Shown here: piece after piece, positions 12,370 through 28,001 of the stretch
Numbering within the stretch: position 1 is the stretch's first letter
Layout of the letters: the number at the start of each line of letters is the position of its first letter
Origin: Oculina patagonica
Taxonomy: Eukaryota
Length of the DNA stretch: 64,000 bases
Assembly: GCF_052425735.1 (NCBI RefSeq)
Contig: NC_135761.1
Location: 63,922,001-63,986,000 of the forward strand
Direction: 5' to 3'
Notes under the pieces: generated by a model
Told to the model about the DNA's origin: nothing
The model's input: only the letters and a program-made list of their open reading frames with translations
The model's database searches: none
Program-made: the position numbers and the translations under genes

Positions 12370-12939
12370 TCACAACAACAAGTGTCTTACACCGCAGAGA
12401 GACGGTTCACAATCCTGATGGTATTCCATCTTACAAATTTTGTGCCACGACGTTTCCTTCGAGATCAATTGCTTCAACATTTGCCCAACTTTATGATCAT
12501 TGTACACGTAATCGTGTTTCTTGAATCTCGCTTCGAATTGACTCATGCTACGTCCTTCGGCCCTATCGATGAGATACATCAACGCGTAATCGCCGCAGCT
12601 CTGACTGTACAACGATTGTAGACTCTGTCCGTTGCGCTCCACGTACTTCCAATGATCGTCCAACCAGTTTTGCAACGGTTGCGCCGTCTGGTACACCTCC
12701 AGGGGTAAGGCGTAACTGTCCAATACTTCGCACACGTTTCCATTCGTCCACAGCGCGATCCAATGCCGACCGCGCATGTAGTGAGGATCGGTGTTGACGA
12801 TGTACCCGCGGGCTTCCGTCTTGAGTGGTTTTCGAGGTAATCGATCGCAGGCCACCGTCCCGTAAAAGTAAGGTTTCAACGACGGGTGATGTCTGGCCAA
12901 CTGATCCAACTGCACGTTATTCAAAGTCACTTTTTCCAT
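12370..12939 (-). CDS. Adenain-like (C5/Ulp1 clan) maturation cysteine protease
   Basis: IVNTD...GRHWIAL (His), LDSY (Asp), QSLYSQSCGDY (Gln/Cys). Confidence 0.93.
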   Translation of the reverse strand: MEKVTLNNVQLDQLARHHPSLKPYFYGTVACDRLPRKPLKTEARGYIVNTDPHYMRGRHWIALWTNGNVCEVLDSYALPLEVYQTAQPLQNWLDDHWKYVERNGQSLQSLYSQSCGDYALMYLIDRAEGRSMSQFEARFKKHDYVYNDHKVGQMLKQLISKETSWHKICKMEYHQDCEPSLCGVRHLLL

Positions 12940-12941
12940 CA

Positions 12942-14345
12942 CTAACGCTGGTACACGTCGTACAACACGGCTTTGTTCTTGTCTATCTCCAAGAGATTCT
13001 CAAACTCTCCGTACACGATGATGGTCAAGTTCACAGCTGGGTTGGCTCCAAAGTTCAGCTCTATTAGTAGATTTCCGGCTTGCTTGGGGTTCATCCTGTA
13101 ACTGTCCACGCATCCATTGGCCACGTTGTCGAACACGAACAACGTGCAATTCTTTCCTTGTCCCCAATCGTCCCCTCTCACCATGTTTCCTTGCTGCTTG
13201 CACAGGCAACCGGTGGCTTGCAAGAAACGGTGGTACCCTCTGAGATCTTTGGTGCCATCGTTGTGGACCAACTCTAGCGTCTCGTAAGGATACTCTTCTC
13301 CTCCCACGAGTTGTTTTATGCTGCTCATTCCAAACTTCTGAAAACAGAAGGGATCGTTGACCACGTTCCCGGTGAAGGCTGTGGACAGTACCATACCCAC
13401 GATCACGCGGTTGGGAATTCTTCCTTGGAACAAATTGGTGCATTCGTACCGTCGTTGATCTCCCTGCATGTTGAAGGTCCGAATCTCGCTTCTTACGGTC
13501 GGGTAACTCACCACTTGACTCTTGGTGGTCATCTCATCCATCAGTCTCCTGTACGTCGTGGGATTGAGACGCACTTGACACAGGTACATTCGAACTTTGA
13601 CTTCCTCGGCCGTCAACTTTCCTGCCAGACCCACTCCGTTCAAGAACACGTCAGGAGAATTGAAGTACATCTGTATTCCTATCTGCACTCTGGGTACCAA
13701 CAACTTGCTCAGATGAAACACTTCGATGAGGGGTTTGAAACGCAACACGTGTCGCTTGCCTTCCGTGTAATTGGCTTGTTCTGCTTTAGAGTTCTTGAGA
13801 GCCTCCTTGTGATTGGCGGTCAGGGCTACATAGTCTGCGTGTCCAGCTCCAGCGTTGGCTGCTGTGTTCGTGTTATTGTCCGTCCACGTGGCTGGGAAAT
13901 CGATATGATTGTACCATCCTTGAGGTTTCAAGATGGTTTCTCCATCACGTCTGTCGTAATTCAGCAACGTTTCCAAGAAGGCTCTGTAATGGTACGTGTC
14001 CGTCTGGGGACTGATGAGAGTACCGTTGAGACGCACGCTGATTTGCTTGAACAGAGAATGGGCTAGATTGTTGACGGGCCACAGCTTGTCGGCAGCTGCC
14101 ACGTTCTCATCGTTGTCTTTCTTCAGTTGCAATTCTACCTCGAAGAAGCTACGGCTGAGATCGATGTAATCTTCTTGGGGGTCGATCTGAAACTCCACCG
14201 GATTGATGCCTGTGGTGTAGGTCTGAACGGGGACCATCCGATACGACGAGACGCTGACGTCTGTCGGTGGTACGGCAAATAGATCCAATCGAGGATTGGC
14301 CTCGCGTCTCGACTGCGGGTAGGCGCTCGAGATGGTTTCGGTCAT
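12942..14345 (-). CDS. Major capsid protein (double jelly-roll, hexon-like), 467 aa
   Basis: LDLF..P.T, PVEFQI..YIDL, PVNNLAHSLFKQI, YHYRAFLETLLNY and C-terminal IIVYGEFENLLEIDK, typical of Polinton MCP; start at ATGA overlap 14342-14345. Confidence 0.9.
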   Translation of the reverse strand: MTETISSAYPQSRREANPRLDLFAVPPTDVSVSSYRMVPVQTYTTGINPVEFQIDPQEDYIDLSRSFFEVELQLKKDNDENVAAADKLWPVNNLAHSLFKQISVRLNGTLISPQTDTYHYRAFLETLLNYDRRDGETILKPQGWYNHIDFPATWTDNNTNTAANAGAGHADYVALTANHKEALKNSKAEQANYTEGKRHVLRFKPLIEVFHLSKLLVPRVQIGIQMYFNSPDVFLNGVGLAGKLTAEEVKVRMYLCQVRLNPTTYRRLMDEMTTKSQVVSYPTVRSEIRTFNMQGDQRRYECTNLFQGRIPNRVIVGMVLSTAFTGNVVNDPFCFQKFGMSSIKQLVGGEEYPYETLELVHNDGTKDLRGYHRFLQATGCLCKQQGNMVRGDDWGQGKNCTLFVFDNVANGCVDSYRMNPKQAGNLLIELNFGANPAVNLTIIVYGEFENLLEIDKNKAVLYDVYQR

Positions 14346-14578
14346 CGTCTTCTCTTCCTTCTTGCACGGCGCTTCCGTAAGGTCTGTATCCAGTCGTAGC
14401 CAGGAGGCTTTCTGACCTCGGGACCTATCCACCCGCCCTTTTGTACTTTTCGTCGTCGCCTCTTTTGTCCCAACAAGGCCTGGTTCAAAAGTGCCAGTGA
14501 GAATCCTTCTCCCCGCTGTCTGACGGGGGCGCGTTTGGATCGGACCAATCTAGACGATCGCGAGTAAACGGGATTCAT
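14342..14578 (-). CDS. Small Arg-rich core-like protein (78 aa)
   Basis: QRGEG-F and QKGG-W motifs; ATGA overlaps at both ends. Confidence 0.65.
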   Translation of the reverse strand: MNPVYSRSSRLVRSKRAPVRQRGEGFSLALLNQALLGQKRRRRKVQKGGWIGPEVRKPPGYDWIQTLRKRRARRKRRR

Positions 14579-14832
14579 TTTTCGCCAAAGATGTCGTTCA
14601 GTTTTCTCTTGACGTTTCGTTCTATGACGTTTTTCAGTTTGCGTTTCACGACTCGTTCAGGACCACTCTTGGCTCCTTGACCCGCTTTACGAATGCGGTC
14701 CGCGACGCCGCGCCCACTCTTAAATCCTCTCACGGCTCCACCGAGAGACTCTCTCACGATGTCGGCCAAAAATCCGTTCCCCTCTTGAGGTGGAGGATCC
14801 GGTGTGAAACGCGTCAGGGCACCGCCTCTCAT
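14575..14832 (-). CDS. Small basic amphipathic virion-like protein (85 aa)
   Basis: MRGG-A and QEGNG-FLADIVRE motifs; lies between penton and MCP; ATGA overlaps. Confidence 0.65.
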   Translation of the reverse strand: MRGGALTRFTPDPPPQEGNGFLADIVRESLGGAVRGFKSGRGVADRIRKAGQGAKSGPERVVKRKLKNVIERNVKRKLNDIFGEK

Positions 14833-15860
14833 GTTCGCTTGATATGTAAGGTCACGATCGTGTTGCCTTCGCCAAAATCCACCAGTTTACCTGTAGTCTC
14901 GCTCACTTGCGTTTCAATAATGTCCACGATCTGGTTGCGGAGTGGAATATATTGTATGTGGAGAGGTTCAAAGTACTTGATACCTTTTCCTTCACGTTGA
15001 AAGTGAATTTCCCGCAACAGATCCGTGACTTGATTTCCCACAACGGAACTACCACCCACATCTGAGTAAACGAAAAGCGTACGCGATGCATCTCCAATCA
15101 CTTTTTGGAAGGCTCTGTTGAGTTTCACAAAGCGCCAGTTACAATAGCAACTCAAGAAAAGCTGTCCATTCTCAACAACCCAGAAATTTTTCCTGCCCTC
15201 TCCAAAATCATCCACGTCTATGGGATCGGGTATCGTAGCGTGGTGGCATTCCGGCTTCAGGTTCGGCCCGAGAAACACGTTTTCTTTCTCGTCCTTTTTT
15301 ACCCATCCCATGTCAAAGGCCAAATCCTCGTTGAAAGACATGTACTATGGGACGCCTTCAGTTTTCACTTCCGAGACGTCCAAGTTCGAGTTGTCGAGGA
15401 CTAGTTCTTCACCTTCCCACTTGAACGTATATTCCCACTGCTTTCCATTATCGGGCGACTTGGTCAAGTCTCCCACGATACGCTTGTATTCTTTGACTTG
15501 ATCGAACTTGAAGACCAGGGCTTTCATGAAACTGAGGCCATCCACGATGTTGTCGTCATATAGAATGTCCTGGAACGTCAGATCGGTGGTCACCGACTTG
15601 CTTTGCACGCGACCCTCGTTGTCTTTGCGCTTGAGCATCCACTGGGCACTCAAGAGAGGAAACTTGAACGACTTAAAGCGAGTTAAGTCGATGCTGGCAT
15701 CTGGCACGGAAATGCTACTCAATCCCACTTTCCAACCGGTTCCTTCCAATCGTAGCGGGTGAGGTAATCGCACCTTGAAAGAGTTTGCTCTATTCTCTGG
15801 AAACTCGGTTCCGCTGCTGTGACTGGGTAACGTGACGTAAAATCCTTCCTCGTGGCTCAT
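14829..15860 (-). CDS. Minor capsid protein (penton, single jelly-roll), interrupted by an in-frame TAG at 15345-15347
   Basis: N-half FYVTLPS..FPEN.ANSFKVRLP..L.G.WKVGL and C-half FVYSD..VGNQ.TDLLR..Y.PL..G..VDF..G.TIVTLH are in the same frame (...GVP*YMSF...). Confidence 0.88.
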
Positions 15861-16945
15861 GATTTTTTTAGAGCCGTCTTCTCGATCCAGCTGTCGTACT
15901 TGTCTGGCCAGCCTTTCCAGTGCACCAAGACTTTATTTCCTTTTCGTTTGACGATCTTGTCCACCCTGAAGACATCGTCGTCGGACACTGCGACTTTTTG
16001 TAGATCTTCCTTGTAAAACGTACCGCGAAGGGGGGTGTCGTCCAACTCTTGGATCTTGTAAGTCGTGACGGGTGGTCCCCGACGCACCTCTCGTATCACA
16101 AACACTTCTTCGGTCCAGCCGGGTAAATACCCTTTCTCGAACGTGCGAAATTTCTTGTTCAATCTCACGCGTTCTCCTACTTTTAGCGGGGTTTTTCGTT
16201 CTCTTTTACCCGACGACAATCTCTTCGCGTACAGACGTTCCCACACTTTTCCTTCGTTGCTCGCATTCACTTTCTCGGGGCTGGTGCCGATGCTACGATG
16301 GTGGGATCCGTTGTACCCTTTCACCAAGGCCTGGAGTACAGGTAGGTAACTCAGCGTGTTCTTGGCGGTAAAGTATCGGTACATGCGTTCCTTGAGAGTG
16401 CGGTTGAAGCGTTCCACGATGCTGGCTTTGGTATCTCCGGCCGTGGAAAAGTGGTGGATGCCTTCCCGTTTCATCAACGCGGCAAACGTCTTGTTGTAAA
16501 ATTCTTTCCCGTCGTCGGTCTGTAGGTTCTGAGGTTTGCGTCCATCGGCTCGTTTCAAAATCTTGGCAAAGGCGCCCGACACCGTTTTTCCCGTCTTGTC
16601 TTTTAGGGGTTCCACCCAAGCATATTTAGACAAGACGTCAATCACGTTGAGTAGATATCTGTGACCCTTGTTGTATTTGGACAACGGTTGCGTTTCCACT
16701 AAATCGGCTACCCACTGCTGGTCGACGTTAAACACCAGGACCGGTAACGTGGCAAAACGACGTCTGCGCGGTTTGTGAAGGGTATAACCCAAATCGCGCT
16801 CCAATACTTTTTTGGCTGTGTCGACGGATATCTTGTGCGATTTGGCGAATCTTGCTATCCCACCCAAGCTACCCGGTTGACTGGGATCGTGGTAGTCCGA
16901 AAGTATCTTCTCGTCCTTTTTCTTTTTCTTCAGCTTCTTTGGCAT
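15857..16945 (-). CDS. Retroviral-like (rve) integrase with C-terminal chromodomain
   Basis: DDE triad WVADL / LQTDDGKEF / SIVERFNRTLK; chromo-like VDKIVKRKGNKVLVHWKGWPDKYDSWI; likely start MPKKLK at 16945. Confidence 0.95.
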   Translation of the reverse strand: MPKKLKKKKKDEKILSDYHDPSQPGSLGGIARFAKSHKISVDTAKKVLERDLGYTLHKPRRRRFATLPVLVFNVDQQWVADLVETQPLSKYNKGHRYLLNVIDVLSKYAWVEPLKDKTGKTVSGAFAKILKRADGRKPQNLQTDDGKEFYNKTFAALMKREGIHHFSTAGDTKASIVERFNRTLKERMYRYFTAKNTLSYLPVLQALVKGYNGSHHRSIGTSPEKVNASNEGKVWERLYAKRLSSGKRERKTPLKVGERVRLNKKFRTFEKGYLPGWTEEVFVIREVRRGPPVTTYKIQELDDTPLRGTFYKEDLQKVAVSDDDVFRVDKIVKRKGNKVLVHWKGWPDKYDSWIEKTALKKS

Positions 16946-16967
16946 GTTGACGACGCTCTGACCACCC

Positions 16968-17243
16968 TCATATATAAGTGCCGTGTAATTTATGAGCTGC
17001 CTCTTCGATCGTGGTCGGATGAAGTTTGTAAATAGAAGCAAACAGCTCGGCTGGATCCTTGAAATGTCTCAACCATAATATAAACGGTATCAATCTGAAA
17101 TAGTTTATTTCTATGTGAGTGGCTTCGAACACTCTCAAGGGGGAGTCACTTGTATCTTCCGGTATATCTATACCCCTCCCAAATTCAGCATACGCTTTCT
17201 CGCACAATCTTTTCAACCACTCCCACTTTCCATACAGATCCAT
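16968..17243 (-). CDS. Maverick hypothetical protein (91 aa)
   Basis: Intact ATG ORF between a polyA signal (about 17257) and the integrase. Confidence 0.55.
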   Translation of the reverse strand: MDLYGKWEWLKRLCEKAYAEFGRGIDIPEDTSDSPLRVFEATHIEINYFRLIPFILWLRHFKDPAELFASIYKLHPTTIEEAAHKLHGTYI

Positions 17244-17270
17244 GACAAATGAACTTTTATTTATACAACG

Positions 17271-18041
17271 TCAATTTAAATAGCCTGCATCAATAAATAT
17301 GTTATCAAAAGATTTTGTACATGTTTCACAACTTCTAGGTCTCCACAGTTTGGCTTTTTGGTAGTCGTCGCCCAGGTAAGCTTCGTCTTTATCCATGGCG
17401 CAACGGTTGCAGAGATCTCTGTCTAACAGTCTATCCGCTATTTCTTGCCAGCGATTGCTTTCTAGGCGTTGCAATTTTACTTGAGTTGCCAGTTGGTTGC
17501 ACAGTTCTTCGTACGTGTTTGCGTCGACCGTGATGGGTTGTTTCAAGTAAGCAGACAATGTCTGGCTTAGGGCTACACTCGCTCTCAACGGGGCGATGAG
17601 ATCTTCTAAACCACTCCGGTCGTCAAAGTTGCAGACGTTCGCGTTCAACCAGAACGAGACGCCATTGCCAATGGGCGGCGGTTTGCGAGACGTCGCGAAG
17701 AAAAAGGCTCGCTGTAATGGCACGTAGACAAATTCATTCCAATGTCTATCCCAGAGATAACCGCGCCCAATGTCTTTGAGGGTCGTTAGGACGGCTCCCT
17801 TCCAGTGAGGGTTCTCTTTGAGCCATTCACTTTCGGTGACGCGGTTCTTGGCACACCCGCGCTCTTTCACCATGTCCTCGAAGACATAGACTCTCCTTGG
17901 AATGTTTTCGGGTATGGTGGTGGGATAGTCTAACGACAACGTACTCATTCCCGTGTCGGTCTGGATCTTTTTTTCTAGCTTTGTACAATTGGTGTAGAAG
18001 AGGCGTTGTTCCAGGTCCATCCAGTTTTTTCTCGTACCCAT
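17271..18041 (-). CDS. Maverick hypothetical protein (about 256 aa) with C-terminal CxxC...CxxC
   Basis: ATG at 18041 one nt after the upstream stop; CNRC...CETC; AATAAA follows. Confidence 0.7.
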   Translation of the reverse strand: MGTRKNWMDLEQRLFYTNCTKLEKKIQTDTGMSTLSLDYPTTIPENIPRRVYVFEDMVKERGCAKNRVTESEWLKENPHWKGAVLTTLKDIGRGYLWDRHWNEFVYVPLQRAFFFATSRKPPPIGNGVSFWLNANVCNFDDRSGLEDLIAPLRASVALSQTLSAYLKQPITVDANTYEELCNQLATQVKLQRLESNRWQEIADRLLDRDLCNRCAMDKDEAYLGDDYQKAKLWRPRSCETCTKSFDNIFIDAGYLN

Positions 18042-18042
18042 G

Positions 18043-18318
18043 TCACTGCTCTTGGCTTGCTTCGGCCGAACCTTTGTGTAATGCACTCTCGAGATCGCAC
18101 ATCCAATGCTCTTGACACTGCATAAACGTGTAGCCGGCTTCCATGCCACGTTTCGCGCGCTCCAATAGGTAATCTTCGTCTGACTGAAAATCGTCCCTTT
18201 TTAGATCCCTATAGTAAGGCAATGGTTCCCAGTCCTTGGGATCTCCTTGTACAAAGACACCGTTGACTTGTGGGGTTTGAGTTTGAGTTTGGCTGGAATC
18301 GCTGTCTGTGCTTTCCAT
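18043..18318 (-). CDS. Maverick acidic hypothetical protein (91 aa), first gene of the leftward unit
   Basis: ATG about 36 nt downstream of the minus-strand TATA box. Confidence 0.65.
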   Translation of the reverse strand: MESTDSDSSQTQTQTPQVNGVFVQGDPKDWEPLPYYRDLKRDDFQSDEDYLLERAKRGMEAGYTFMQCQEHWMCDLESALHKGSAEASQEQ

Positions 18319-18353
18319 CGCTGCAACTGAGTCGACAAATGGACGCGCAGCTC

Positions 18354-18468
18354 TTTTTATACGTTGGATGACGTCACCTGGGTCATTGCCGGTTGGTCGG
18401 AAGAGGTCACGTGTTACTTCTCTGGTTGGTTCGTGCGTATTGACGTCATCCGAGAGTAGAGTATAAAA
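18354..18468. promoter_or_regulatory. Symmetric bidirectional Pol II promoter
   Basis: TATAAAAA (minus, 18354-18361), TGACGTCA at 18369 and 18441, CACGTG at 18408, TATAAAA (plus, 18462), between divergent ATGs at 18318 and 18517. Confidence 0.75.
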
Positions 18469-18516
18469 GCGCCGTGTTGTCTCCTGTTAGTCCTCAGTTG
18501 GAGCATCGAGAGCACC

Positions 18517-19425
18517 ATGGACGTAGCAGAACCCAGCAAAAAGCGACAGAGGAGAGGGACTGGAAACCCCAAGAAACCCAAAGTTCCCCGTAAAAAGAGA
18601 CATCCTACAAAGAAGAAGATGGAGTTGAAAGAGGAAGTGTTGGAGGAGGGGGAAATTTTCGACCCCGACCAGTTCCTGCAACAGACCTTTGACGACACGG
18701 AGCGCGACCCGGTTTGCCCCGTCCACAAAGAACCGCTGACCAAGAGAATGACGGACGGGGGATGGGAGTTCTACTTTTGCCCCCACACGAGCGAAGGCAC
18801 CATCTGTTTCATTTGCACCGGTAGCGCCCACATTGACCAGTACGTGGTGGCGGTCAATCAACAATTACCGGCTTACTATTATTGGAACATGAATAAGATG
18901 AAATGTTACTGCAACGAGAGTCTCATTCTGAGCATGTCGAAATCAGAGAGCAACCCGGACAGGATCTACCTCAAGTGCAGAAAAGGGAAATGTCGGTTCT
19001 TCCAATGGGCCGACAGTGTTCCGTTTGGCAAGATCAAAGCCTGGCTGGAAGGAAAGGAATATGTAGGAAACGAGGATCCCCTCTACTCGAGAAGGTCTGG
19101 ACTTGACTCTAGGGACGAATTTGGATACCCCAGAAGAGGACAAGACGTGGTGGATAGACCGCAACGAATTCTGGATGGGAGACCCGCCTTCAAAGTACAA
19201 CACTACCCACCCCCGGTCAAGGATTGGATTGGTGATCTTCCCTTGGACGAGTCATTGGTCAAACAGTGTCAAGAGCAAAAGTTTTGGGTGGATGGAGAAG
19301 GGAAAATTATTCTTCCCCCGGAATTGGCTGGCGTGAAGTACGACTCGGATGAAGAGAAAATACTGAGAAATCAACTGTATCTGAGATGCATTTCCCAGAA
19401 ACAATATCCTAATTTGGATCATTGA
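18517..19425 (+). CDS. GRF-type zinc-finger protein (302 aa) with basic NLS-like N-terminus
   Basis: KCYCNESLILSMSKSESNPDRIYLKCRKGKCRFFQWAD matches zf-GRF; a second degenerate finger CPVH...FYFCP..C precedes it. Confidence 0.8.
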   Translation: MDVAEPSKKRQRRGTGNPKKPKVPRKKRHPTKKKMELKEEVLEEGEIFDPDQFLQQTFDDTERDPVCPVHKEPLTKRMTDGGWEFYFCPHTSEGTICFICTGSAHIDQYVVAVNQQLPAYYYWNMNKMKCYCNESLILSMSKSESNPDRIYLKCRKGKCRFFQWADSVPFGKIKAWLEGKEYVGNEDPLYSRRSGLDSRDEFGYPRRGQDVVDRPQRILDGRPAFKVQHYPPPVKDWIGDLPLDESLVKQCQEQKFWVDGEGKIILPPELAGVKYDSDEEKILRNQLYLRCISQKQYPNLDH

Positions 19426-19490
19426 GATTTACAGTTTAAACATTTTCATATGTATTCTACGTCAAGCATCAGAGTGCAGTTGGCTCTGGC

Positions 19491-20012
19491 ATGACTCCGG
19501 AAAACGTGTGCATGATCTTGGACTTGGAAGGTTACTTTGTGGAGAAGACGTTTCGAGTACGCGAGTTGGGTTATTACACTTGGCAAGAAAAGTTCGGACG
19601 CCATGCTTTCTACATGAGAATGTCGTGGTGCAACTTATCTTCCAGAGACAGAAAAACCGTGTCTTACGTCAAATACAACGTGCACGGACTGACGTATCAA
19701 CCCAGAAAGGAAGAAAAGGCCTACGAGTATGACAGGGTGGAGGAGGTGATGTGGGATTTGTACGAGGAGACCAAAACCCCCGAGAGAACCGTGGTGGCTT
19801 ACAAGGGAGGACACGTCGAAAGAGACTTGTTGGACAAACTGAACATTCCTAGCGTGAATTTAGAACTGTACGGATGTCCGAAATACGACGTGTTGAAAGA
19901 GATGATTGTAGAACCTTTACCTAGTTGCGGTTTTCATTTAAACGAAGGACATTGTCCGATGACCGAATGTTATGCTTTCTGGTTATGGTACCAGACTTTT
20001 GTTGTTAAATAA
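19491..20012 (+). CDS. DnaQ/DEDD-fold nuclease, Maelstrom-like (173 aa)
   Basis: ILDLEGY..F.VRELG, VHGL, YKGG, NLE..CP and C.FH....HC motifs; AATAAA overlaps the stop. Confidence 0.7.
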   Translation: MTPENVCMILDLEGYFVEKTFRVRELGYYTWQEKFGRHAFYMRMSWCNLSSRDRKTVSYVKYNVHGLTYQPRKEEKAYEYDRVEEVMWDLYEETKTPERTVVAYKGGHVERDLLDKLNIPSVNLELYGCPKYDVLKEMIVEPLPSCGFHLNEGHCPMTECYAFWLWYQTFVVK

Positions 20013-20069
20013 ATTTAAGAATTGCTCCATGCCGAAACTGAATTACGAGAGGATGGTATTCAATCGCTT

Positions 20070-21005
20070 TAACAACAACAACAAATACCGCACGCTAAAT
20101 TATATTTTTTTTCGCGAGCGGTGAAAATCACAACAAAGTCGATGACACTTGTGCTTAGAGACCAAAAACGTGAAATTTTCGGCTCAATAACTTTCATCGA
20201 AATAATATCTTTTATGGTTGGACGTCCTTTTTGATTTAAGGGCCGAAAAAATAATTTTTCTTCGAGAAAAAAAAAACATTTGAACAACGGCCGAATGAAC
20301 CACATACAACAATTATATTTTTAGCGACCGGTGAAAAATCACAACAAACTCGTTGACACACTTGTTTAGGGTGTAAAAATGTGAAGATCCGGCTCAATGA
20401 CTTGCTTTGAGATTCACTAAAATAATATCATTCATGGTTGGACGTCCCTTTCATTTCAAGGCCTCAAAAACAAACAAACAAACGCATTTAAACAACAACA
20501 AATACCACACGCTAAATTATATTTTTTCGCGAACGGTAAAAATCACAACAAAGTCGTTCACACACTTGTTTAGAGTCTAAAAATGTGAAAGGTTCGGCTC
20601 AATTACTTGCTTTGAGTTTCACTGAAATGATATCATTCATGGTTGGACGTCCCTTTGATTTAAGGGTCGCAAAAATATTTTTTCCTCGAGAAAAACGCAT
20701 TTGAACAACGGCCAAATGAACTGCACGCTAAAATTATATTTTTTCGCGACCGGTGAAAAATCCCAACAAAGTCGTTGACACACTTGTTTAGAGTCTAAAA
20801 ATGTGAAAGAGTCGGCTCAATGACTTGCTTTGAGTTTCACTGAACTGATATCGTTCATGGTTGGAGGTCTCTTTGCTTTAAGGGCTGCGAAAAAATTCTT
20901 CTTCGAGAAAAATGCATTTGAACAACGGTCAAATGAACCGCTCGCTAAAATTATATTTTTCGCGAGCGGTGAAAAATCACAACGGAGGCGGTGACACATT
21001 TGTTT
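20070..21005 (+). repeat. Degenerate 200-220-bp tandem repeat (about 4.3 units) inside the Maverick
   Basis: aattatattt..cgcga.cggtgaaaaatcacaacaaagtcg recurs near 20098, 20311, 20514, 20733 and 20950. Confidence 0.85.
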
Positions 21006-21505
21006 AGGTTTTTTAAAAATCGTTAAAGCTTCACTTCTAGGTGGCTAGGTTTTATTTTTTCTGAATCCTAGTTGAAGGTTCCTTCGATATTTTTAGGACC
21101 GCGAAAAGAAAAAGATGAAAGCGTTTGTTTACGAAAGACAACGACAACTGCGCGAGCAATTTCGCTTAAAAGAATAATTCAGTCCATTGTTCATTCGTAA
21201 AGTTCGGTTTCATGTTTTCTTGACCATAAACACAACTAGACCAAAAAAAACTTGAACGAAATGAACGGGTCTAAAACCTTTTTCTTCTTTACTATGCACG
21301 GTTCATGATGGCCGCACGAACAAAAACAAACCACTCGTCAAAATTTACAACGTAACCAAATTTATTTTTCGCAGTAAATACATTTTATCAAACGCTCTTC
21401 GTCTTGTACAGTAGAGTATGGAGACATTAGCTCACCTTAAAGCTTATATCCTTCTTGAAAAGAGCTGTAATCCGACAAGAAAACTTCGTCCGTTTTGCTG
21501 TACTT

Positions 21506-21760
21506 TTCCGAGAATGAACACACGCGGGTTCCTAGAATTCCGAGAATTCCGAGAAAGATTCTCCACGCGCGTGCGTCGGGATTTTTCCCTTGGGGAAAAT
21601 CCCGTCAGCTTGGGATTTTACCCTTGCGGGGAAAATCCCGTCACCTTGGGTGACATTGATCATGAGATCTCATTGGTTCATTCTGTATCAGGTCACCTCG
21701 ATTGACCAATGGGAATGCTAGAGCCCAGTTCTTCTGGGATGGGAAAGTTGTATAAAAGGA
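21506..21760 (+). promoter_or_regulatory. Promoter of the PolB unit: 4 GAS motifs, 4 kB-like motifs, CCAAT, TATA
   Basis: TTCCNNGAA at 21506, 21529, 21538, 21547; GGGATTTT(T/A)CCC or GGGGAAAATCCC at 21578, 21592, 21612, 21628; CCAAT at 21706; TATAAAA at 21751; ATG at 21819. Confidence 0.7.
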
Positions 21761-21818
21761 GCTACCTTGCTCATTTATTTACTCGCAAACATAGTTTGGT
21801 CTGAGCGCTCATCAAGAT

Positions 21819-22112
21819 ATGGAAAAAGAGAAGACTTTGGAGGAGCCTGGAATTGAGAGGGAAGAACAGTTGGAGGAGCCTGGAATTGAGATACGAGACG
21901 AAGATGAAGAGGTGGACGTAGTTGGAGACGATGAAACGGAGGGCGAACCTGTCAAGAGAGCAAGATTACAGGTTAGCACGTGGTTGAATTCATCGCTCGT
22001 TTGCGACGTAAGTTCTTACATTGTGTTTTGTTTTCTGTCGTAGGTCGAGAGTGAAAGGTTGACAGCCGATACAAGCGCTACAAGTAACGAAGCAAGCACT
22101 TCGGACGAAGAG
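21819..22112 (+). CDS. Two acidic coding exons (21819-21971, 22044-22112), probable spliced 5' leader of PolB
   Basis: CAG|GTTAGC donor, pyrimidine tract plus TAG acceptor, GAG|GTAAAT donor; both exons phase 0. Confidence 0.6.
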
Positions 22113-22747
22113 GTAAATGGTTATTGTGATTATTTATCCAATGAAATAAAAGAAAAATTTATTGGGAGGCAGACTTCATGCATGCGGATTTGAAAATCGA
22201 TCACCAGTGAAGGAAAAGATGTGACGATTATAAACTTAACTGACCTGCGCATCATACTGTATCACAACGGCTATGTTTTCCGAGTAAAATGCAATGCTAA
22301 AATAAGAGAATGAATGATGTAATTATCATGGCAATTATCAACAATGTTTGAAACTGCAAACGTCGTTAACAATATTAGACTAAATGCCTTTTAAAGACAT
22401 GCACAAAATCCTTACTCTACATTAATTTCATTTTTATTCGCCACCTTTGATTTTGACGTCTTTAACATGTATGACGGGTGAATGAGATTTGGAAGGATCA
22501 GTTGAAGACAACAAATGTTAAGTAAATTTTAAGTAATTGTTTGTGCAAGTAGTCGATTACTGATTGACAAGGTCGTAGTCATGTCATGGTTTAGGAGCCG
22601 ACTACGTTCCTCCCTCCCCGCTTGCACACGAGTTAATGAAGTTGCTTGATTGGTTAGAAGCTTTATGTCCTCACGCAAACACCAAATAGGACATAGAGTT
22701 CACTCCTCGATTATTTAACTGTATTGTTTGTTTTATTTACATTTAAG

Positions 22748-25700
22748 ATGTTTGACTTTGAGCTGACTCCTCACGTCGACCGCCGCGTACGCAAGTTTGG
22801 TCTCCATATGAGGAACTACACTGCGCGTATTATCCAGAGAGGTGGAGGTGACTTGTCTGTACCCATAGGACAGAGACCCGTCTTGGCACAAGAAATGTCA
22901 GCTGCCCTCCAACGTGCCATACAAAGACATATCCTCACCGATGATAACGTCAGAGACAATGACCATCTACTCATCAATGTCAATAGCGACCGGTTACGCA
23001 ACGCCTATCACTCCGTACGACTCACAGTGAGAGATTGGCGAAATAACACAGCGCCCGCACAACAGGTGTTACAGCAATTGTCCGATATGTTGAACTCCAA
23101 CGAACACTTTACTATGGACGACGCCTTTAATATGAACATTTCTCATGTGAGAGACCCTGGAACCGGCGGTACCTCCAGAGCCATAAAGTTGGGTTTGGAT
23201 CCCATACAAAAAATCCTAAAGGATAAAAAGTGTGTGGTGCAAATCAAGAATACAGACAACTTGTGTTGTGCCAGAGCCTTGGTGACTGCCCAAGCGTATC
23301 GTGATTTCGGTTCAGATCACCCTCGTTACAAAGGTCTAAAGAATGGTCAACGGGAGCAAACGGAGGCAGCCCAAGAGTTGCATAGAAGAGCGGGCGTACC
23401 CGAAGGACCTTGTGGGCTCGATGAGATCACCCTCTTCCAATCCCATTTGAGAGAATACCAACTTGTCATCGTATCCGTGGAACACGGGTACCAGATTATT
23501 TACAAAGGGCCAGAAAAACCCGAAGCCAAGCGACTCGTGTTAATCAAACACAACCAACACTACCACACATGCAATTCTTTAAAGGGGTTTTTCGGCCGAA
23601 GCTACTACTGCCTTCGCTGTGAAACAGGGTATGACAGCACTTCCCGACACAACTGTCCCGGCACCAAATGCTTCGCTTGCCATCAGACGGACTGTACCGA
23701 CTACCGCCGCGGTGGCACCGCCGAATTGCCTTGCGTCGATTGCCGCCGGAACTTCTTTGGAGAAAGATGTCATCGACTTCACAAAACCCGCCAGAGCGGA
23801 AGCGGCAAGCCCTCCGAGTACGGTAAACGGAACAGCGTGTGCCACACCCATAAAAAGTGCCTCGATTGCCGAAAGATCTACAGCGGATACGAGATCAAAA
23901 ACGGACATCGCTGTGGCTTCAGTGAATGCCCTTCCTGTAAAAAGTACCATGACCTTCGTACGCACAAGTGCTACATACAAAACCCCGAAAAGATAGCGGA
24001 AGAAAGACGAAATAGGAAGAGAAGGAGAGATGGAACGTCCTCTACCCCCACCGAACGCGACCCACCCATCTTTGTCAGCTGGGATGCGGAAGCCATGCAG
24101 GAAGACGGAGAGCACGTACCCAACTTGATTTGTGCCATGACGTCCAACACGGACGGCGAATACAAGTTTGAGGGGGAGTCCTGCGTGGTGGAATTCTTGA
24201 CCTGGCTGCGACGTCTGGCCGAAGAAAACGACATTATAGCCCTCGCCCACAATTTTCAGGGCTATGACGCTTATTTTATTTTAAATGAATTGTACGCCCA
24301 AGCCATCTGCCCTGACCAAGTCGTCAATGGGGCCAAGATCCTGAGCATGAGCATCCCCGGCATCACCTTTAAAGACTCCATGTGCTTTATGCAGATGAGC
24401 CTTGCTACCTTTCCCAAAGCCTTTGGCCTCACGGAGCAAAAGAAGGGGTTTTTCCCCCATTTGTTTAACACTCTGAGCAATCAGAACTACGTGGGTCCCA
24501 TACCCGCAAGGGACTATTATGACCCTGAAGGCATGACAAAAGAAAGGAAAGAAGAGTTCGAGGTATGGTACCAAGAACGCGTGGATGAAGAGTACCAATT
24601 CGACTTCCAGCAAGAATTGTTATCATATTGCAAGTCAGACGTGAGGTTGCTGCATGATGGATGCCGCATCTTCCGGGAGGAATTCAAGGAAATGGCTGGG
24701 TTTGACCCGATGGACCAGTGCATAACCATTGCCTCGGCGTGTTCCCGATACTACAACACGCAGTGCCTCAAAGAACATACCCTGGCCTCTGAACCCGTTC
24801 GAGGCTGGCATGGAAGGGGAAATTCCCATTCGCGAGTTTCGTTAGAGTGGCTGCATTACCTAGACAGCCAATCCTCTACCCGTATACAACACGCCCGGAA
24901 CGGGGGAGAATGTGAACTCTTTCTCCGGGGACACAGTGTGTGCGTGGATGGTAAAGACAGCGACGACACCGTCTATGAATTTTACGGGTGCTTTTTCCAC
25001 GGCTGTCCTGATTGCTTCCCAAACAGAGACAGGAAGTACAGTCTGTTGAGCACGAGGAGTATGCGAGAAGTCTATGAAGAAACGCGATGTCGCGCCGCCG
25101 TCATCAGGGCCGCGGGATACACTCTCGTCGAAATCTGGGAATGTCAATGGAACAAGTTGAAAAAGGAAGACACCGCTGTCAAAGAATTTGTGGACTCGCT
25201 GGACCTGGTCACACGCCTAGAACCCAGAGAGGCCTTTTTTGGAGGACGCACCAATGCTGTCAAATTGTATGACAAGACCGAAGAGGAAGAGCAGATCCAC
25301 TATGTCGATTTTACATCGTTATACCCCTGGGTAAATAAAACTTGTGTTTACCCCCAAGGTCATCCCACCGTCATACTAGAACCGGGACATACAGACGTCA
25401 GCCAGTACTTTGGATTGGCCAAGTGTACCGTCAGCCCACCCTATGGTCTGTACAGCCCTGTGTTACCTTACCGTCAGGGAGGAAAATTGATCTTCCCTCT
25501 CTGTCGAAGCTGCCTGGAAACGGAGCAAAGCAAGCCATTGACGGAGCGGTCCGCCACTTGCCATCACACCCGCCAAGAACGCTCATTAACGGGCACATGG
25601 TGTACTCCTGAACTTGAAGAAGCGGTCCGTCAGGGTTACGTGGTGGACCACATCCACGAGGTGTGGCACTTTCCCCAACGATCGGACCAATTGTTTAAAA

Positions 25701-26665
25701 AGTATGTCAACACCTTCCTTCAGATGAAGCAGGAAGCGAGCGGTTGGCCCTCTTGGACCGGACAAGATCCTGAAAAAAGAGCCCAATATGTCACGGCCTT
25801 TTACGAGAAAGAGGGCATACAATTAAATGTTGACAACATCGAAAAGAACCCTGGCAAGCGCTCCTTGGCCAAGATGATGCTCAACTCCTTCTGGGGCAAG
25901 TACGGCCAGCAATGTAACAAGCCTCAAGTAGAGGCCTTTACTTCGCCCGCCGACTTCTACTCTCTCTTGAGAGATGAAAGCGTCATCATCAGCGACCTTA
26001 GGGTCGTCAACGATGAAATGTTGGAGATCGTTCATAGGAAGAGAGAGGGATCCGAAAACGTCCAGCCCAACGTCAACATCTTTGTGGCGTGTTTTACTAC
26101 ATGCTATGCACGCTTGAAGCTGTATCAAGACGGACTCTCTCGACTAAAGCCGGAACAGATCCTGTATTTCGATACAGACTCCCTCATTTATAAGCGAGGT
26201 CCCACAGATCCAACACTTCCTCTAAGCGACTTCCTTGGCGACTTCACTAACGAACTAAACGATGACGACTTTATTACTGAGTTCGCCTCTGCAGGGCCGA
26301 AAAATTACGGCTACAAAACAGCCCAAGGCAAAGTCTGCTGCAAGGTGAGAGGGTTCAGTTTAAATGCTAGAGGATCCTCCCAGTTAAACTTTGACATATT
26401 AAAGGATAATGTCATCTCGGAGGTGAGAGAGCCATTAGACGTGCCCCGCGACATCCCCGTCTTCAACCCGCATAAAATAACCCGAGATAAGAAGAAGAAG
26501 ACCCTCAACACAATCACCGAGATAAAACGGTACAAAGTCGTTTTTGACAAACGCATAGTGGATCGCAACTCATTTTATTCTTATCCATACAGATACATGA
26601 AGAGCAGACCTGACATAGAGGAAGAGGAACGAATAGACCTGGCAGAACTTTTAAATGGACAATAA
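22748..26665 (+). CDS. polB: Protein-primed family B DNA polymerase (TP region, OTU-like, Zn-finger, 3'-5' exo, Vsr-like insert, pol)
   Basis: Exo motifs WDAE, HNFQGYD, YCKSDV; pol motifs YVDFTSLYP, KMMLNSFWGKYGQ, YFDTDS, GPKNY, KVRG; uninterrupted ORF. Confidence 0.97.
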   Translation: MFDFELTPHVDRRVRKFGLHMRNYTARIIQRGGGDLSVPIGQRPVLAQEMSAALQRAIQRHILTDDNVRDNDHLLINVNSDRLRNAYHSVRLTVRDWRNNTAPAQQVLQQLSDMLNSNEHFTMDDAFNMNISHVRDPGTGGTSRAIKLGLDPIQKILKDKKCVVQIKNTDNLCCARALVTAQAYRDFGSDHPRYKGLKNGQREQTEAAQELHRRAGVPEGPCGLDEITLFQSHLREYQLVIVSVEHGYQIIYKGPEKPEAKRLVLIKHNQHYHTCNSLKGFFGRSYYCLRCETGYDSTSRHNCPGTKCFACHQTDCTDYRRGGTAELPCVDCRRNFFGERCHRLHKTRQSGSGKPSEYGKRNSVCHTHKKCLDCRKIYSGYEIKNGHRCGFSECPSCKKYHDLRTHKCYIQNPEKIAEERRNRKRRRDGTSSTPTERDPPIFVSWDAEAMQEDGEHVPNLICAMTSNTDGEYKFEGESCVVEFLTWLRRLAEENDIIALAHNFQGYDAYFILNELYAQAICPDQVVNGAKILSMSIPGITFKDSMCFMQMSLATFPKAFGLTEQKKGFFPHLFNTLSNQNYVGPIPARDYYDPEGMTKERKEEFEVWYQERVDEEYQFDFQQELLSYCKSDVRLLHDGCRIFREEFKEMAGFDPMDQCITIASACSRYYNTQCLKEHTLASEPVRGWHGRGNSHSRVSLEWLHYLDSQSSTRIQHARNGGECELFLRGHSVCVDGKDSDDTVYEFYGCFFHGCPDCFPNRDRKYSLLSTRSMREVYEETRCRAAVIRAAGYTLVEIWECQWNKLKKEDTAVKEFVDSLDLVTRLEPREAFFGGRTNAVKLYDKTEEEEQIHYVDFTSLYPWVNKTCVYPQGHPTVILEPGHTDVSQYFGLAKCTVSPPYGLYSPVLPYRQGGKLIFPLCRSCLETEQSKPLTERSATCHHTRQERSLTGTWCTPELEEAVRQGYVVDHIHEVWHFPQRSDQLFKKYVNTFLQMKQEASGWPSWTGQDPEKRAQYVTAFYEKEGIQLNVDNIEKNPGKRSLAKMMLNSFWGKYGQQCNKPQVEAFTSPADFYSLLRDESVIISDLRVVNDEMLEIVHRKREGSENVQPNVNIFVACFTTCYARLKLYQDGLSRLKPEQILYFDTDSLIYKRGPTDPTLPLSDFLGDFTNELNDDDFITEFASAGPKNYGYKTAQGKVCCKVRGFSLNARGSSQLNFDILKDNVISEVREPLDVPRDIPVFNPHKITRDKKKKTLNTITEIKRYKVVFDKRIVDRNSFYSYPYRYMKSRPDIEEEERIDLAELLNGQ

Positions 26666-27136
26666 GAATGTTGAACTTTTATTGGAACTTTGATTTGTTT
26701 GGATTTGACACACTTACTTTTCAAATTGGCCTCCTCATGTTGTTGAAAGGAGTGATTGTTTTAACAAGGTCAATTTCTTGTTTTCCTATGTTGCCAAAAG
26801 GAAGTCACCTTCGCGTAGAAATGCAATCGGTGGTACATAAACCGGATTAAGTTAATAGTGCTTTGAGAATTTTTTTGAAAATTTTTGAGAATGTCAAAAA
26901 ATGAAGAACATCCTCCTCGTTGTATTTACCGCGCCGTGAAGTTTTTGTGATGTCCATCATTTATTTCAGCACATTAAAGAAGAGGTTAAACGTGTACATG
27001 GTGTCCAATTTTCTTTTTTAGAAGTGCACACGATTTTCGTGGTTCGTAGTGTCACGCCGTGTCACGCAATCTGATGGGTCAGTCTTTCGTTCCCAGTAAT
27101 ACCGAGGAAAAGGGCGATTCACCCCCATCCCCCTCT

Positions 27137-27995
27137 CTTTACAAGCGTGTTTTTTCTCAGTATCGCCGACCCAAATTCTTTGAAAAAGCATGGCAATTTG
27201 TGAGCAATATATAATGGATGGTGGTCTTGCTAACTCACTATGAAGTGTGAGTGTATCGCGAATATCGAATATCGAAAATCGAATATCGAGTATCGAATAT
27301 CGAAAATCGAATATCGAGTATCGAATATCGAAAATCGAATATCGAGTATCGAGTATCGAGTATCGAATATCGAGTATCGAGTATCGAGTATCGAATGTCG
27401 AGTATCGAGTATCGAATATCGGAGGGCTTTGATGACGTAGGTCCCAATGGGACCACGTGGTCGATATCCAGGCTCACCATGTTGAATAAATTAAAATTAA
27501 AGCCGCCATCTTGAATACATTAAGTGATGACGTAGGAGGGTTTGGTCACGTGGGTCCCTAAGGTACCACGTGACCCATATCCGGGCTCACCATGTTGAAT
27601 AAATTAAAAGTAAAGCCGCCATCTTGAATACATTAAGTGATGACGTAGGAGGGTTTGGTCACGTGGGTCCCTAAGGAACCACGTGGTCGATATCCGGGCT
27701 CACCATGTTGAATAAATTAAAAGTAAAGCCGCCATCTTGAATACATTAAGTGATGACGTAGGAGGGTTTGGTCACGTGGGTCCCTAAGGTACCACGTGAC
27801 CCATATCCGGGCTCACCATGTTGAATAAATTAAAAGTAAAGCCGCCATCTTGAATTCATTAAGTGATGACGTAGGAGGGGTTGGTCACGTGGGTCCCTAA
27901 GGGATCACGTGGTCTATATCCGGACCTGTGATTGGTTCACTGCCATAATCCTGCAATCTGATTGGAGCACTGTGAAAGCGCCTACCTATACTACT
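27137..27995 (-). repeat. Right terminal inverted repeat (859 bp) with heptamer array (27255-27422) and 113-bp units (27432-27923)
   Basis: Reverse complement of 7157-8015. Confidence 0.95.
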
Positions 27996-28001
27996 GATAT
28001 T
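27996..28001 (+). repeat. Right target-site duplication GATATT
   Basis: Matches 7151-7156. Confidence 0.95.

What the first reader, a model, noticed from the sequence alone, without database searches (positions are those of the whole stretch)
21506..21760. Viral polymerase promoter carries a clustered STAT (GAS) x4 plus NF-kB x4 cassette: a possible immune-signal-activated endogenous virus
Seen: within 135 bp there are four TTCCNNGAA motifs (21506, then three abutting at 21529-21555). They are followed by two duplicated palindromes of about 35 bp, each made of two kB-like sites (GGGATTTTTCCC-tt-GGGGAAAATCCC; GGGATTTTACCC-ttgc-GGGGAAAATCCC), then CCAAT, TATA (21751) and ATG (21819). Known: TTCN3GAA is the STAT GAS element, GGGRNWYYCC is the Rel/NF-kB site, and cnidarians have both factors. 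Inference: the replication gene may be switched on by host innate-immune or stress signalling, a prophage-like induction switch. I do not know of this being described for Mavericks.
Basis: partly seen in the sequence, partly recalled or inferred. Interest (0 to 1): 0.88.

Follow-up and report, generated by a model that had tools for sequence, protein, structure and literature searches.

The report
Coral Maverick polymerase promoter motif arrays
Just upstream of the DNA-polymerase gene of a young virus-like transposon (Maverick) in a coral genome lie two small arrays of repeated palindromic motifs that resemble docking sites for the immune regulators NF-kB and STAT; sister elements keep them, but no tool here can show that they respond to immune signals.

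Summary
The letters are there as described. Four TTCN3GAA 9-mers lie at 21506-21555 and four alternately oriented 12-mers at 21578-21639. They are followed by CCAAT, TATA (21751) and ATG (21819). The ATG opens a three-exon protein-primed PolB gene of a full-length Maverick (7157-27995, 6-bp target duplication, 98% identical terminal repeats). An annotated Oculina patagonica protein has exactly this exon structure.

The cluster is not chance, but it arose by tandem duplication of one 9-bp unit and one 36-bp unit, so it does not represent eight independent events.

The cassette is present in all 7 sister elements that share this upstream module. Unit numbers vary (2-4 and 2-8), the 12-mer is almost invariant, and motif columns are better kept than linkers. 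It is absent from 3 more distant relatives, which keep only the core promoter leader.

Two 12-mers fit the published kB consensus exactly and two fit 9 of 10 positions. The 9-mers fit the GAS formula but are asymmetric and abut.

The elements are recombinant mosaics, so the conservation is confounded.

Verdict: a real, lineage-specific upstream activator module, plausibly NF-kB-type. Immune induction remains untested.

The parts
7157..27995 (.). Full-length Maverick/Polinton element
   Evidence: The terminal inverted repeats were found. Their ends were read. PolB and integrase were identified.
7151..7156 (.). Left copy of the 6-bp target-site duplication (GATATT)
   Evidence: Read directly. 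The same hexamer is at 27996-28001.
27996..28001 (.). Right copy of the target-site duplication (GATATT)
7157..8015 (.). Left terminal inverted repeat, with internal 113-bp and 7-bp tandem arrays
   Evidence: 864-nt arms, 98% complementary.
27137..27995 (.). Right terminal inverted repeat
15857..17041 (-). Integrase ORF (rve core plus chromodomain)
   Evidence: Pfam PF00665 at E=1.5e-12 and PF00385 at E=1.9e-5.
20087..21007 (.). 218-bp tandem array (4.3 copies) upstream of the promoter, shared with sister elements
21385..21505 (.). Highly conserved 121-bp block directly upstream of the first 9-mer
   Evidence: It is 91-98% identical in all 7 sister loci. 105 of 121 columns are invariant. It has no Rfam match and no significant fold.
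21506..21514 (.). Isolated 9-mer that fits TTCN3GAA (TTCCGAGAA)
   Evidence: It is intact in 7 of 8 copies.
21529..21555 (.). Three abutting 9-mers that fit TTCN3GAA (a 9-bp tandem repeat)
   Evidence: Sister elements carry 1-3 units here.
21564..21573 (.). 10-bp CG-rich perfect palindrome between the two arrays
   Evidence: Read. Partly conserved.
21578..21589 (+). 12-mer arm 1 (GGGATTTTTCCC), 9 of 10 to the kB consensus
21592..21603 (-). 12-mer arm 2 (minus strand GGGATTTTCCCC), which contains an exact kB-consensus 10-mer
21612..21623 (+). 12-mer arm 3 (GGGATTTTACCC), 9 of 10 to the kB consensus
21628..21639 (-). 12-mer arm 4 (minus strand GGGATTTTCCCC), which contains an exact kB-consensus 10-mer
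21640..21654 (.). 15-bp palindrome (GTCACC..GGTGAC) that closes the array
   Evidence: Read. It forms the last hairpin in the DNA fold.
21672..21710 (.). Pair of CCAAT boxes (inverted at 21672-21676, direct at 21706-21710)
21751..21757 (+). TATA box
   Evidence: It lies 30 nt before the conserved leader, the same spacing as in L005.
21781..21809 (+). Conserved leader, the probable transcript start region
   Evidence: Unique in the window. Present in L001, L005, L025, L027 and L028, and in L005 it lies 23 nt before an intronless PolB ORF.
21819..21971 (+). PolB exon 1 (51 codons, acidic)
   Evidence: GT follows it. 50 of 51 residues match annotated protein P0102.
22044..22112 (+). PolB exon 2 (23 codons)
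   Evidence: AG precedes and GT follows. 23 of 23 residues match P0102.
22748..26665 (+). PolB exon 3 (1305 codons plus stop), uninterrupted
   Evidence: Pfam PF03175 at E=9.8e-43. 99.5% identical to P0102 residues 75-1379.

Best explanation
Bases 21506-21655 are the upstream activating part of an RNA polymerase II promoter (two CCAAT boxes, a TATA box, a conserved leader). This promoter drives the three-exon protein-primed DNA polymerase gene of a young Maverick. The module was built by tandem duplication of two short palindromic units. One is a 9-bp unit that fits TTCN3GAA. The other is a 12-bp unit, GGGATTTT-N-CCC, that always occurs in alternating orientation. I think these are most likely binding sites for dimeric host transcription factors: the 12-mers for the coral's NF-kB (Rel-homology) protein, and the 9-mers, less surely, for STAT. 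PolB transcription would then follow the nuclear activity of those factors.

Shown: the sequences, their promoter position, the gene model, their retention with unit-wise copy-number change in sister elements, and the fit to published kB sites.

Inferred: the binding, the activation, and what signal (immune, symbiosis state or cell type) controls it.
For: Position and gene model:
- The cassette lies 110-275 bp before the TATA box at 21751.
- Both introns are GT-AG and phase 0.
- O. patagonica protein P0102 (1379 aa) matches exons 1, 2 and 3 at 98%, 100% and 99.5%.
- The leader-to-PolB link is kept even in an intronless relative with 59% identical PolB.

Retention:
- The cassette is present in 7 of 7 loci that share the upstream module: 6 on 5 O. 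patagonica chromosomes and 1 in another assembly.
- Across 46 12-mer arms, 11 of the 12 positions carry the window's base in 42-46 arms. Position 9 is free (T 11, C 17, A 18). Orientation alternates strictly, with 2-8 arms per element.
- Motif columns are invariant in 28 of 30 cases against 20 of 36 linker columns (Fisher p=0.0007).
- The same cassette sits in front of two different core-promoter modules.

kB likeness:
- The published consensus is GGGRNNYYCC (PMC11161749). The two minus-strand arms match it exactly.
- With one flanking base, these arms share 9 of 10 bases with the Nematostella NF-kB site that has the highest array z-score listed, 13.78 (PMC10329013 supplement).
- Cnidarian NF-kB specificity is reported as p50-like and conserved from sponges to humans (PMC5700166).
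Against: - Two of the four arms have six bases between GGG and CCC and miss the consensus at one position.
- The validated anemone sites start with GGGG and are 10-11 bp long.
- The 9-mers have unequal half-sites and abut at 9 bp. On my own knowledge of STAT footprints, neighbouring units could not be occupied together.
- I found no description of cnidarian STAT DNA specificity. Knockdown of the single Nematostella STAT did not change the cGAMP response (PMC8713801).
- The conservation is confounded. The elements are mosaics whose non-coding flanks are 84-98% identical while PolB exon 3 is only 65-79% identical.
- The 121-bp block upstream is as conserved as the motifs.
- The cassette is absent from three relatives with 56-63% identical PolB, and it is decaying in L025.
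- No transcript or occupancy data could be consulted.
Confidence: 0.4

Rival explanations
1. The arrays are real activator sites, but they serve constitutive or cell-type-specific expression. They would be bound by NF-kB in a developmental role or by other dimeric host factors, and the promoter would not be an immune- or stress-induced switch.
For: The sequence evidence is the same as for the best explanation. Nothing in the sequence specifies a trigger. Other conserved palindromes and the 121-bp block suggest a composite promoter with several inputs. Only PolB carries the cassette, which is not what a whole-element induction switch would need.
Against: NF-kB in cnidarians is reported to respond to cGAMP and to symbiotic state (PMC8713801; PMC5700166). 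An NF-kB-bound promoter would therefore be expected to follow such states to some degree.
Confidence: 0.25
2. The arrays are functionless tandem repeats in a non-coding stretch. Frequent recombination among co-resident elements keeps that stretch similar, and the resemblance to kB and GAS sites is coincidental.
For: Both arrays are products of tandem duplication. Copy number varies between elements. Non-coding flanks in general are more alike than the PolB coding sequence, which shows mosaic history and not constraint. The cassette is absent from more distant relatives. Short factor-site matches are common: 8% of random Nematostella promoters have a predicted kB site (PMC10329013).
Against: Motif columns are kept better than linker columns inside the same recombining stretch (28 of 30 against 20 of 36, p=0.0007). 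Copy-number change always adds or removes whole units and preserves the alternating orientation. The position relative to the CCAAT and TATA boxes is typical of activator sites. The cassette is kept in front of two different core promoters.
Confidence: 0.2
3. The alternating 12-mers are recognised by a protein of the element itself, or they act as hairpin- or cruciform-forming DNA. Either way they would give self-regulation of PolB without using host immune factors.
For: The region folds as three or four perfect hairpins (-29.6 kcal/mol against -13.3 +/- 2.4 for shuffles, z=-6.7). The element encodes a GRF zinc-finger protein just upstream on the same strand (18517-19425, Pfam E=3.5e-7). A different G/C-rich palindrome sits next to the inner edge of the terminal repeat in the window and in seven relatives.
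Against: Any palindrome gives a strong fold score. The gaps within and between arm pairs vary (0-8 bp), which suits independent 12-bp sites better than one fixed structure. I identified no sequence-specific DNA-binding protein of the element. Protein-primed replication origins are expected at the termini, not here (own knowledge).
Confidence: 0.1
4. This is the strong form of the first reader's idea: immune or stress signalling through NF-kB and STAT switches the whole element from latency to replication, like prophage induction.
For: It rests on the best explanation. In addition the element is young and apparently complete: 98% identical terminal repeats, an intact target duplication and an uninterrupted PolB. 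The family is multi-copy on at least 5 chromosomes.
Against: The cassette is found once per element and only in front of PolB. No evidence bears on excision, replication or particles. The STAT part is weak (see above).
Confidence: 0.08

Closest known systems
Validated NF-kB target promoters of the sea anemone Nematostella (Nv-IkB; Nv-TRAF3, with three kB sites within 1 kb of the start site)
   Same: Several kB-type sites are clustered within a few hundred bp upstream of the start site. The sites are of the GGG...CCC type and are bound by a p50-like homodimer (PMC2751831; PMC10329013).
   Different: Those sites are 10-11 bp long, begin with GGGG and have been shown to bind. The window's sites are 12-mers in strict alternating pairs. 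Only two fit the 10-bp consensus exactly, and none has been tested. The host is a stony coral, not an anemone.
Promoters and enhancers of viruses and endogenous retroviral LTRs that carry repeated NF-kB or STAT sites (own knowledge; no sequences used)
   Same: A mobile or viral genome places tandem copies of host immune-factor sites upstream of a TATA promoter, so host activation feeds the parasite's transcription.
   Different: Here the carrier is a DNA transposon and virus-like element with a protein-primed polymerase, in a cnidarian. Only one gene carries the sites, and function is unproven. My three literature searches found no paper that describes such sites in Mavericks/Polintons.
Adenovirus E2 early promoter, which drives the viral polymerase, terminal protein and DNA-binding protein (own knowledge)
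   Same: The replication genes of a protein-primed dsDNA virus are driven by a pair of inverted host-factor sites upstream of a TATA-like box. Adenoviruses and Mavericks are related by their polymerase, protease and capsid genes.
   Different: The factors differ (cell-cycle and cAMP-type factors plus a viral activator). There is no sequence similarity, and the comparison was not tested here.
Integrated mavirus virophage reactivated by giant-virus infection (Fischer and Hackl 2016, listed among the references of PMC8502044)
   Same: An integrated Polinton-like element stays silent until an outside trigger acts on its promoters.
   Different: There the trigger is the transcription machinery of a co-infecting giant virus, which acts on all the element's genes. 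Here the candidate trigger is a host factor and only PolB carries the sites.

Membership tests
Maverick/Polinton element | Protein-primed family B DNA polymerase | tested here: met
   PF03175 at E=9.8e-43. One hundred homologues all carry PF03175.
Maverick/Polinton element | Retrovirus-like (rve) integrase | tested here: met
   PF00665 at E=1.5e-12, plus a chromodomain.
Maverick/Polinton element | Long terminal inverted repeats and a 6-bp target-site duplication | tested here: met
   The arms are about 840-860 nt and 98% complementary. GATATT flanks both sides.
Maverick/Polinton element | Capsid, adenovirus-type protease and packaging ATPase genes | tested here: inconclusive
   Only sub-threshold hits were found: Peptidase_C5 at E=0.009 and P-loop or Pox_A32 at E=0.03-0.07. 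No capsid match was found in Pfam, PHROGs or PDB sequences.
NF-kB (kB) binding site | Fit to the published consensus GGGRNNYYCC | tested here: met
   Met for two arms only (21594-21603 and 21630-21639, minus strand). The two plus-strand arms fit 9 of 10 positions. Consensus taken from PMC11161749.
NF-kB (kB) binding site | Resemblance to sites preferred by a cnidarian NF-kB on binding arrays | tested here: inconclusive
   The arms share 9 of 10 bases with the best-scoring listed Nematostella site (z=13.78). The exact 10-mers were not in the supplements held as text.
NF-kB (kB) binding site | Occupancy by host NF-kB and NF-kB-dependent transcription | not testable with these tools
   No expression or occupancy data are available here.
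STAT GAS element | TTC-N3-GAA palindrome | tested here: met
   There are four matches at 21506-21555, and 2-4 in the sister elements.
STAT GAS element | Two equivalent half-sites, and spacing that lets neighbouring sites be occupied together | tested here: not met
   The half-sites read TTCC on one strand and TTCT on the other. Three units abut with 9-bp spacing. That such spacing excludes joint occupancy is my own knowledge.
STAT GAS element | Binding by the cnidarian STAT | not testable with these tools
   I found no description of its DNA specificity. Nematostella has a single STAT gene (PMC8713801).
RNA polymerase II promoter of the PolB gene | TATA about 30 nt before a conserved leader, CCAAT boxes, and a start codon joined to PolB by introns that relatives share | tested here: met
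   Transcripts themselves were not examined.
Heat-shock element | At least three alternating 5-bp units with 2-bp spacing | tested here: not met
   No match in or near the cassette. The window has one match, at 12025, which is chance level. The pattern was typed from my own knowledge.

The most novel reading that the evidence does not exclude
A family of young, multi-copy Mavericks in Oculina corals has wired its replication gene to the host's NF-kB (and perhaps STAT). Element transcription would then follow the host's immune and symbiotic state, since NF-kB activity is reported to rise when cnidarians lose their algae. This would be the first signal-coupled promoter described for an animal Maverick.
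Probability: 0.12. Interest if true: 0.8.

Novelty: new member of a known kind. Interest (0 to 1): 0.45.

Why it matters
Almost nothing is known about how animal Mavericks are transcribed, or what decides whether they are silent or active. This finding gives a defined promoter with a conserved core (CCAAT, TATA, leader) and a lineage-specific add-on of amplified host-factor-like sites. That add-on offers a concrete hypothesis which data already in public archives can check. The host genus, Oculina, is a laboratory model for NF-kB, immunity and facultative symbiosis (PMC12278269). If the link holds, it would connect coral immune and symbiotic state to the activity of an endogenous virus-like element. 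If it fails, the case shows how tandem duplication and recombination can mimic conserved binding-site clusters.

Tried and rejected
- Heat-shock element: the spacing is wrong and there is no match.
- Small RNA or miRNA: the only Rfam match is mir-1001 at 21 bits against a threshold of 100 (E=1), and it simply reflects the palindromes. The conserved 121-bp block has no significant fold (z=-0.5).
- Coding reading: the ORF at 21418-21705 runs through the cassette, but the 28-bp units in sister elements break the frame.
- Shared promoter motif for all the element's genes: the 12-mers, the 9-mer array, the 121-bp block and the leader each occur once, only before PolB.
- More copies from other collections: the metagenome scan gave 17 single matches with no other similarity. 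IMG/VR gave 0 matches for the palindrome, 15 unrelated matches for the 9-mer array, and no PolB relative.
- Array z-scores for the exact 10-mers are not in the supplements held as text.
- Identity of assembly GCA_044670265.1: not found in papers.
- By eye I also compared the arms with remembered consensus motifs of E2F, EBF/COE, CSL and Dorsal. None fitted consistently across copies, because the gaps between arms vary from 0 to 8 bp. These comparisons are leads from memory, not tests.

Slip to report. Only the heat-shock pattern was sent to a tool. When I noticed, I stopped using them. The report rests on motifs quoted by papers, on the GAS formula given in the finding, and on the window's own letters.

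Full report
1. WHAT IS IN THE SEQUENCE

The finding's letters are all present at the stated places.
- Four 9-mers fit TTCN3GAA. One is at 21506-21514. Three abut at 21529-21555 and form a 9-bp tandem repeat.
- Four 12-mers follow at 21578, 21592, 21612 and 21628. Read from their GGGA end they are all GGGATTTT-N-CCC, in the order plus, minus, plus, minus.
- The two pairs of 12-mers are a 36-bp tandem duplication (2.1 copies, 89% matches).
- Between and after the arrays lie a 10-bp CG-rich palindrome (21564-21573) and a 15-bp palindrome (21640-21654).
- Then come an inverted and a direct CCAAT box (21672, 21706), TATAAAA (21751-21757) and the ATG at 21819.

2. IS IT MORE THAN CHANCE?

- TTCN3GAA is not enriched over the whole window (37 matches against 30.5 +/- 5.2 expected). 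Four matches within 60 bp were never reached in 200 Markov simulations, where the largest cluster was 1, 2 or 3 in 98, 101 and 1 runs.
- The 12-mer pattern with up to one mismatch occurs 9 times against 1.1 expected. All four exact matches are in the cassette.
- Both clusters are products of tandem duplication. The number of independent events is therefore small, and statistics on clustering alone say little about function.

3. CONTEXT: A YOUNG, FULL-LENGTH MAVERICK

- The cassette lies inside an element of 20.8 kb (7157-27995).
- Its terminal inverted repeats are about 840-860 nt long and 98% complementary.
- It is flanked by the 6-bp duplication GATATT.
- It encodes an rve integrase with a chromodomain (15857-17041, minus strand) and a protein-primed family B polymerase (Pfam PF03175, E=9.8e-43).
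- Protease, ATPase and SLATT-like matches are all below threshold. No capsid gene was recognised by sequence.
- I saw no interruption in PolB. I did not audit the other genes for breaks.

4. IS THIS THE POLYMERASE PROMOTER?

Yes, as far as sequence can show.
- The ATG at 21819 opens a 51-codon acidic exon that ends before a GT.
- A 23-codon exon (22044-22112) is bounded by AG and GT.
- The long PolB exon begins at the ATG at 22748, right after an AG. All junctions are phase 0.
- I compared the three pieces separately with database proteins. The annotated O. patagonica protein P0102 (KAL9986212.1, 1379 aa = 51+23+1305) matches them at 98%, 100% and 99.5%.
- Other annotated relatives (P0001, P0005, P0121) have the same kind of N-terminal extension.
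- The TATA box lies 30 nt before a leader (21781-21809) that is unique in the window. The leader recurs before PolB in relatives. These include L005, whose PolB is only 59% identical and intronless; there the leader lies 23 nt before the ATG, with the same TATA spacing.
- The window is therefore very probably from Oculina. This is an inference from the 99.5% protein identity.
- Transcripts themselves could not be checked.

5. SISTER ELEMENTS

I fetched the DNA around PolB homologues.

All seven loci that share this upstream region carry the cassette:
- L001, L002, L003, L026, L027 and L028, on five O. patagonica chromosomes;

Unit numbers differ between elements.
- There are 2-4 units that fit TTCN3GAA. 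One unit in L027 and one in L025 each have a single base change that breaks the formula.
- There are 2-8 12-mer arms.

The 46 arms across the eight copies are remarkably uniform.
- Eleven of the twelve positions carry the window's base in 42-46 arms.
- Position 9 is free (T 11, C 17, A 18).
- Orientation alternates without exception.
- Gaps are 2-4 bp within a pair and 0 or 8 bp between pairs.

In an alignment of the alignable part, motif columns are invariant in 28 of 30 cases against 20 of 36 linker columns (p=0.0007).

The same cassette stands in front of two different core-promoter modules.

Three more distant elements (L004, L005 and L006, with PolB 63%, 59% and 56% identical) lack the cassette. 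L004 and L005 keep only the leader and its CCAAT/TATA surroundings, and L006 shows no match at all. The cassette is therefore a lineage-specific addition to an older core promoter.

6. WHY THE CONSERVATION IS WEAKER EVIDENCE THAN IT LOOKS

The elements are mosaics.
- Against the window, PolB exon 3 is 65-79% identical at the DNA level.
- Non-coding parts are much closer: the 218-bp array 80-91%, the spacer 70-92%, intron 2 (where present) 84-94%, and the block at 21385-21505 91-98%.
- L002 is the extreme case. Its promoter is 97% identical over 392 bp, while its PolB protein is 67% identical.

Recombination between co-resident elements is the simplest reading. It means the copies of the cassette are not independent witnesses. 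The 121-bp block directly upstream is as conserved as the motifs (105 of 121 invariant columns, p=0.53 against the motifs). It has no Rfam match and no significant fold, and I cannot explain it.

7. DO THE MOTIFS LOOK LIKE THE NAMED FACTOR SITES?

kB sites:
- The published consensus is GGGRNNYYCC (PMC11161749).
- In the window it has 6 matches against 6.0 expected. Two of them are the minus-strand arms, 36 bp apart. The plus-strand arms miss it at one position, because six bases separate GGG from CCC.
- Nematostella NF-kB sites shown to bind are 10-11-mers of the GGGG...CCC type (PMC2751831; PMC10329013).
- In the list of array-scored sites, the best one (z=13.78) shares 9 of 10 bases with the minus-strand arms. 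Sites one base away from the plus-strand arms are also listed.
- Cnidarian NF-kB is reported to have p50-like specificity conserved from sponges to humans (PMC5700166).
- The kB reading is therefore reasonable for two arms and possible for the others.

STAT sites:
- The formula fits, but the two half-sites differ and three units abut at 9 bp.
- I found no account of cnidarian STAT specificity.
- In Nematostella, knockdown of the single STAT gene did not alter the cGAMP response, whereas NF-kB played a role (PMC8713801).

A heat-shock element is excluded by spacing.

8. MECHANISM AND RIVALS

My best explanation (confidence 0.4) is an upstream activator module made of amplified sites for dimeric host factors, most likely NF-kB for the 12-mers. 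It would tie PolB transcription to the activity of those factors.

Rivals:
- The same sites serve constitutive or cell-type expression (0.25).
- The arrays are functionless tandem repeats kept alike by recombination (0.2).
- The arms are recognised by a protein of the element, or act as cruciform-forming DNA (0.1). The DNA fold has z=-6.7, but any palindrome gives that.
- The strong 'induction switch for the whole element' (0.08). Its weakness is that only PolB carries the cassette.

9. NOVELTY

Viruses and retroelements that carry repeated NF-kB or STAT sites are a well-known kind (own knowledge). Three literature searches found no paper that describes such sites, or any defined promoter, for Mavericks/Polintons. 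The adintovirus paper does not mention promoters. I therefore file this as a new member of a known kind, with moderate interest. The hypothesis can be tested with public Oculina data. The functional claim rests on motif resemblance.

10. SLIP

One of them, the heat-shock pattern, went into. I then stopped using them. The conclusions rest on motifs quoted from papers, on the formula given in the finding, and on the window's own letters. Exons were compared as separate pieces, and the N run at 42792-42934 was left alone.

Noticed in passing
window 21385-21505: This 121-bp block directly upstream of the cassette is the best-conserved piece of the whole region. It is 91-98% identical in 7 sister loci and 105 of 121 columns are invariant, which is more than the PolB coding sequence. 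It has no Rfam match, no significant fold, and occurs once per element. Its function is unknown.
   Followed up: partly
window 20087-21007: A 218-bp tandem array (4.3 copies, 79% matches) lies between the upstream ORFs and the promoter, and sister elements share it. Three of its units each carry one more TTCN3GAA match (20193, 20618, 20836).
   Followed up: partly
window 20000-27136 against L001-L003 and L024-L028: The elements are recombinant mosaics. Non-coding flanks and introns are 84-98% identical while PolB exon 3 is 65-79% identical. Two alternative core-promoter modules follow the same cassette.
   Followed up: partly
window 8051-8063; L002:11460, L003:8765, L004:19, L006:3748, L024:4499, L027:9099, L028:8448: A G5-AT-N-C5 palindrome lies next to the inner edge of a terminal repeat. 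In L004 and L006 it lies about 100-130 bp before a TATA box. In the window it fits the kB consensus on both strands. It may be a second Rel-type or structural element of this Maverick group.
   Followed up: partly
window 7229-7893 and 27259-27923: The terminal repeats contain a 113-bp array (4.4 copies) and a 7-bp array (23 copies).
   Followed up: no
window 29674-31722: A 583-bp tandem repeat has at least 4 copies that are 99-100% identical, just outside the element. Each unit holds a 177-codon ORF with no Pfam match, which is probably not a gene. TRF missed the array because its period exceeds 500.
   Followed up: partly
window 10475-10969 (-): This 164-aa ORF has a sub-threshold SLATT_1 match (E=3e-4, 21.2 bits against a cut-off of 26.3). 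The adintovirus paper lists SLATT homologues among the accessory genes of related viruses.
   Followed up: no
window 21602-21606 and 21638-21642: Each pair of 12-mers is followed by CGTCA in the linker. Where pairs abut in sister elements, the linker is lost. Possibly a further factor half-site.
   Followed up: no
L002:4001-11246 (protein P0004): The annotated 1532-aa gene model fuses the homologue of the window's upstream ORF (19491-20012) with PolB, across the tandem array and the promoter. This is probably an annotation artefact.
   Followed up: partly
L006:3856-3929: A tRNA-His gene lies between a TATA-like box and the PolB ORF of a distant relative.
   Followed up: no
window 42792-42934: A run of 143 N. 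It was left as it is.
   Followed up: no
window 37168-37529 and 40784-41201: Further tandem arrays lie outside the element: a 15-bp unit in 24 copies, and an array of A/T-rich palindromic units.
   Followed up: no
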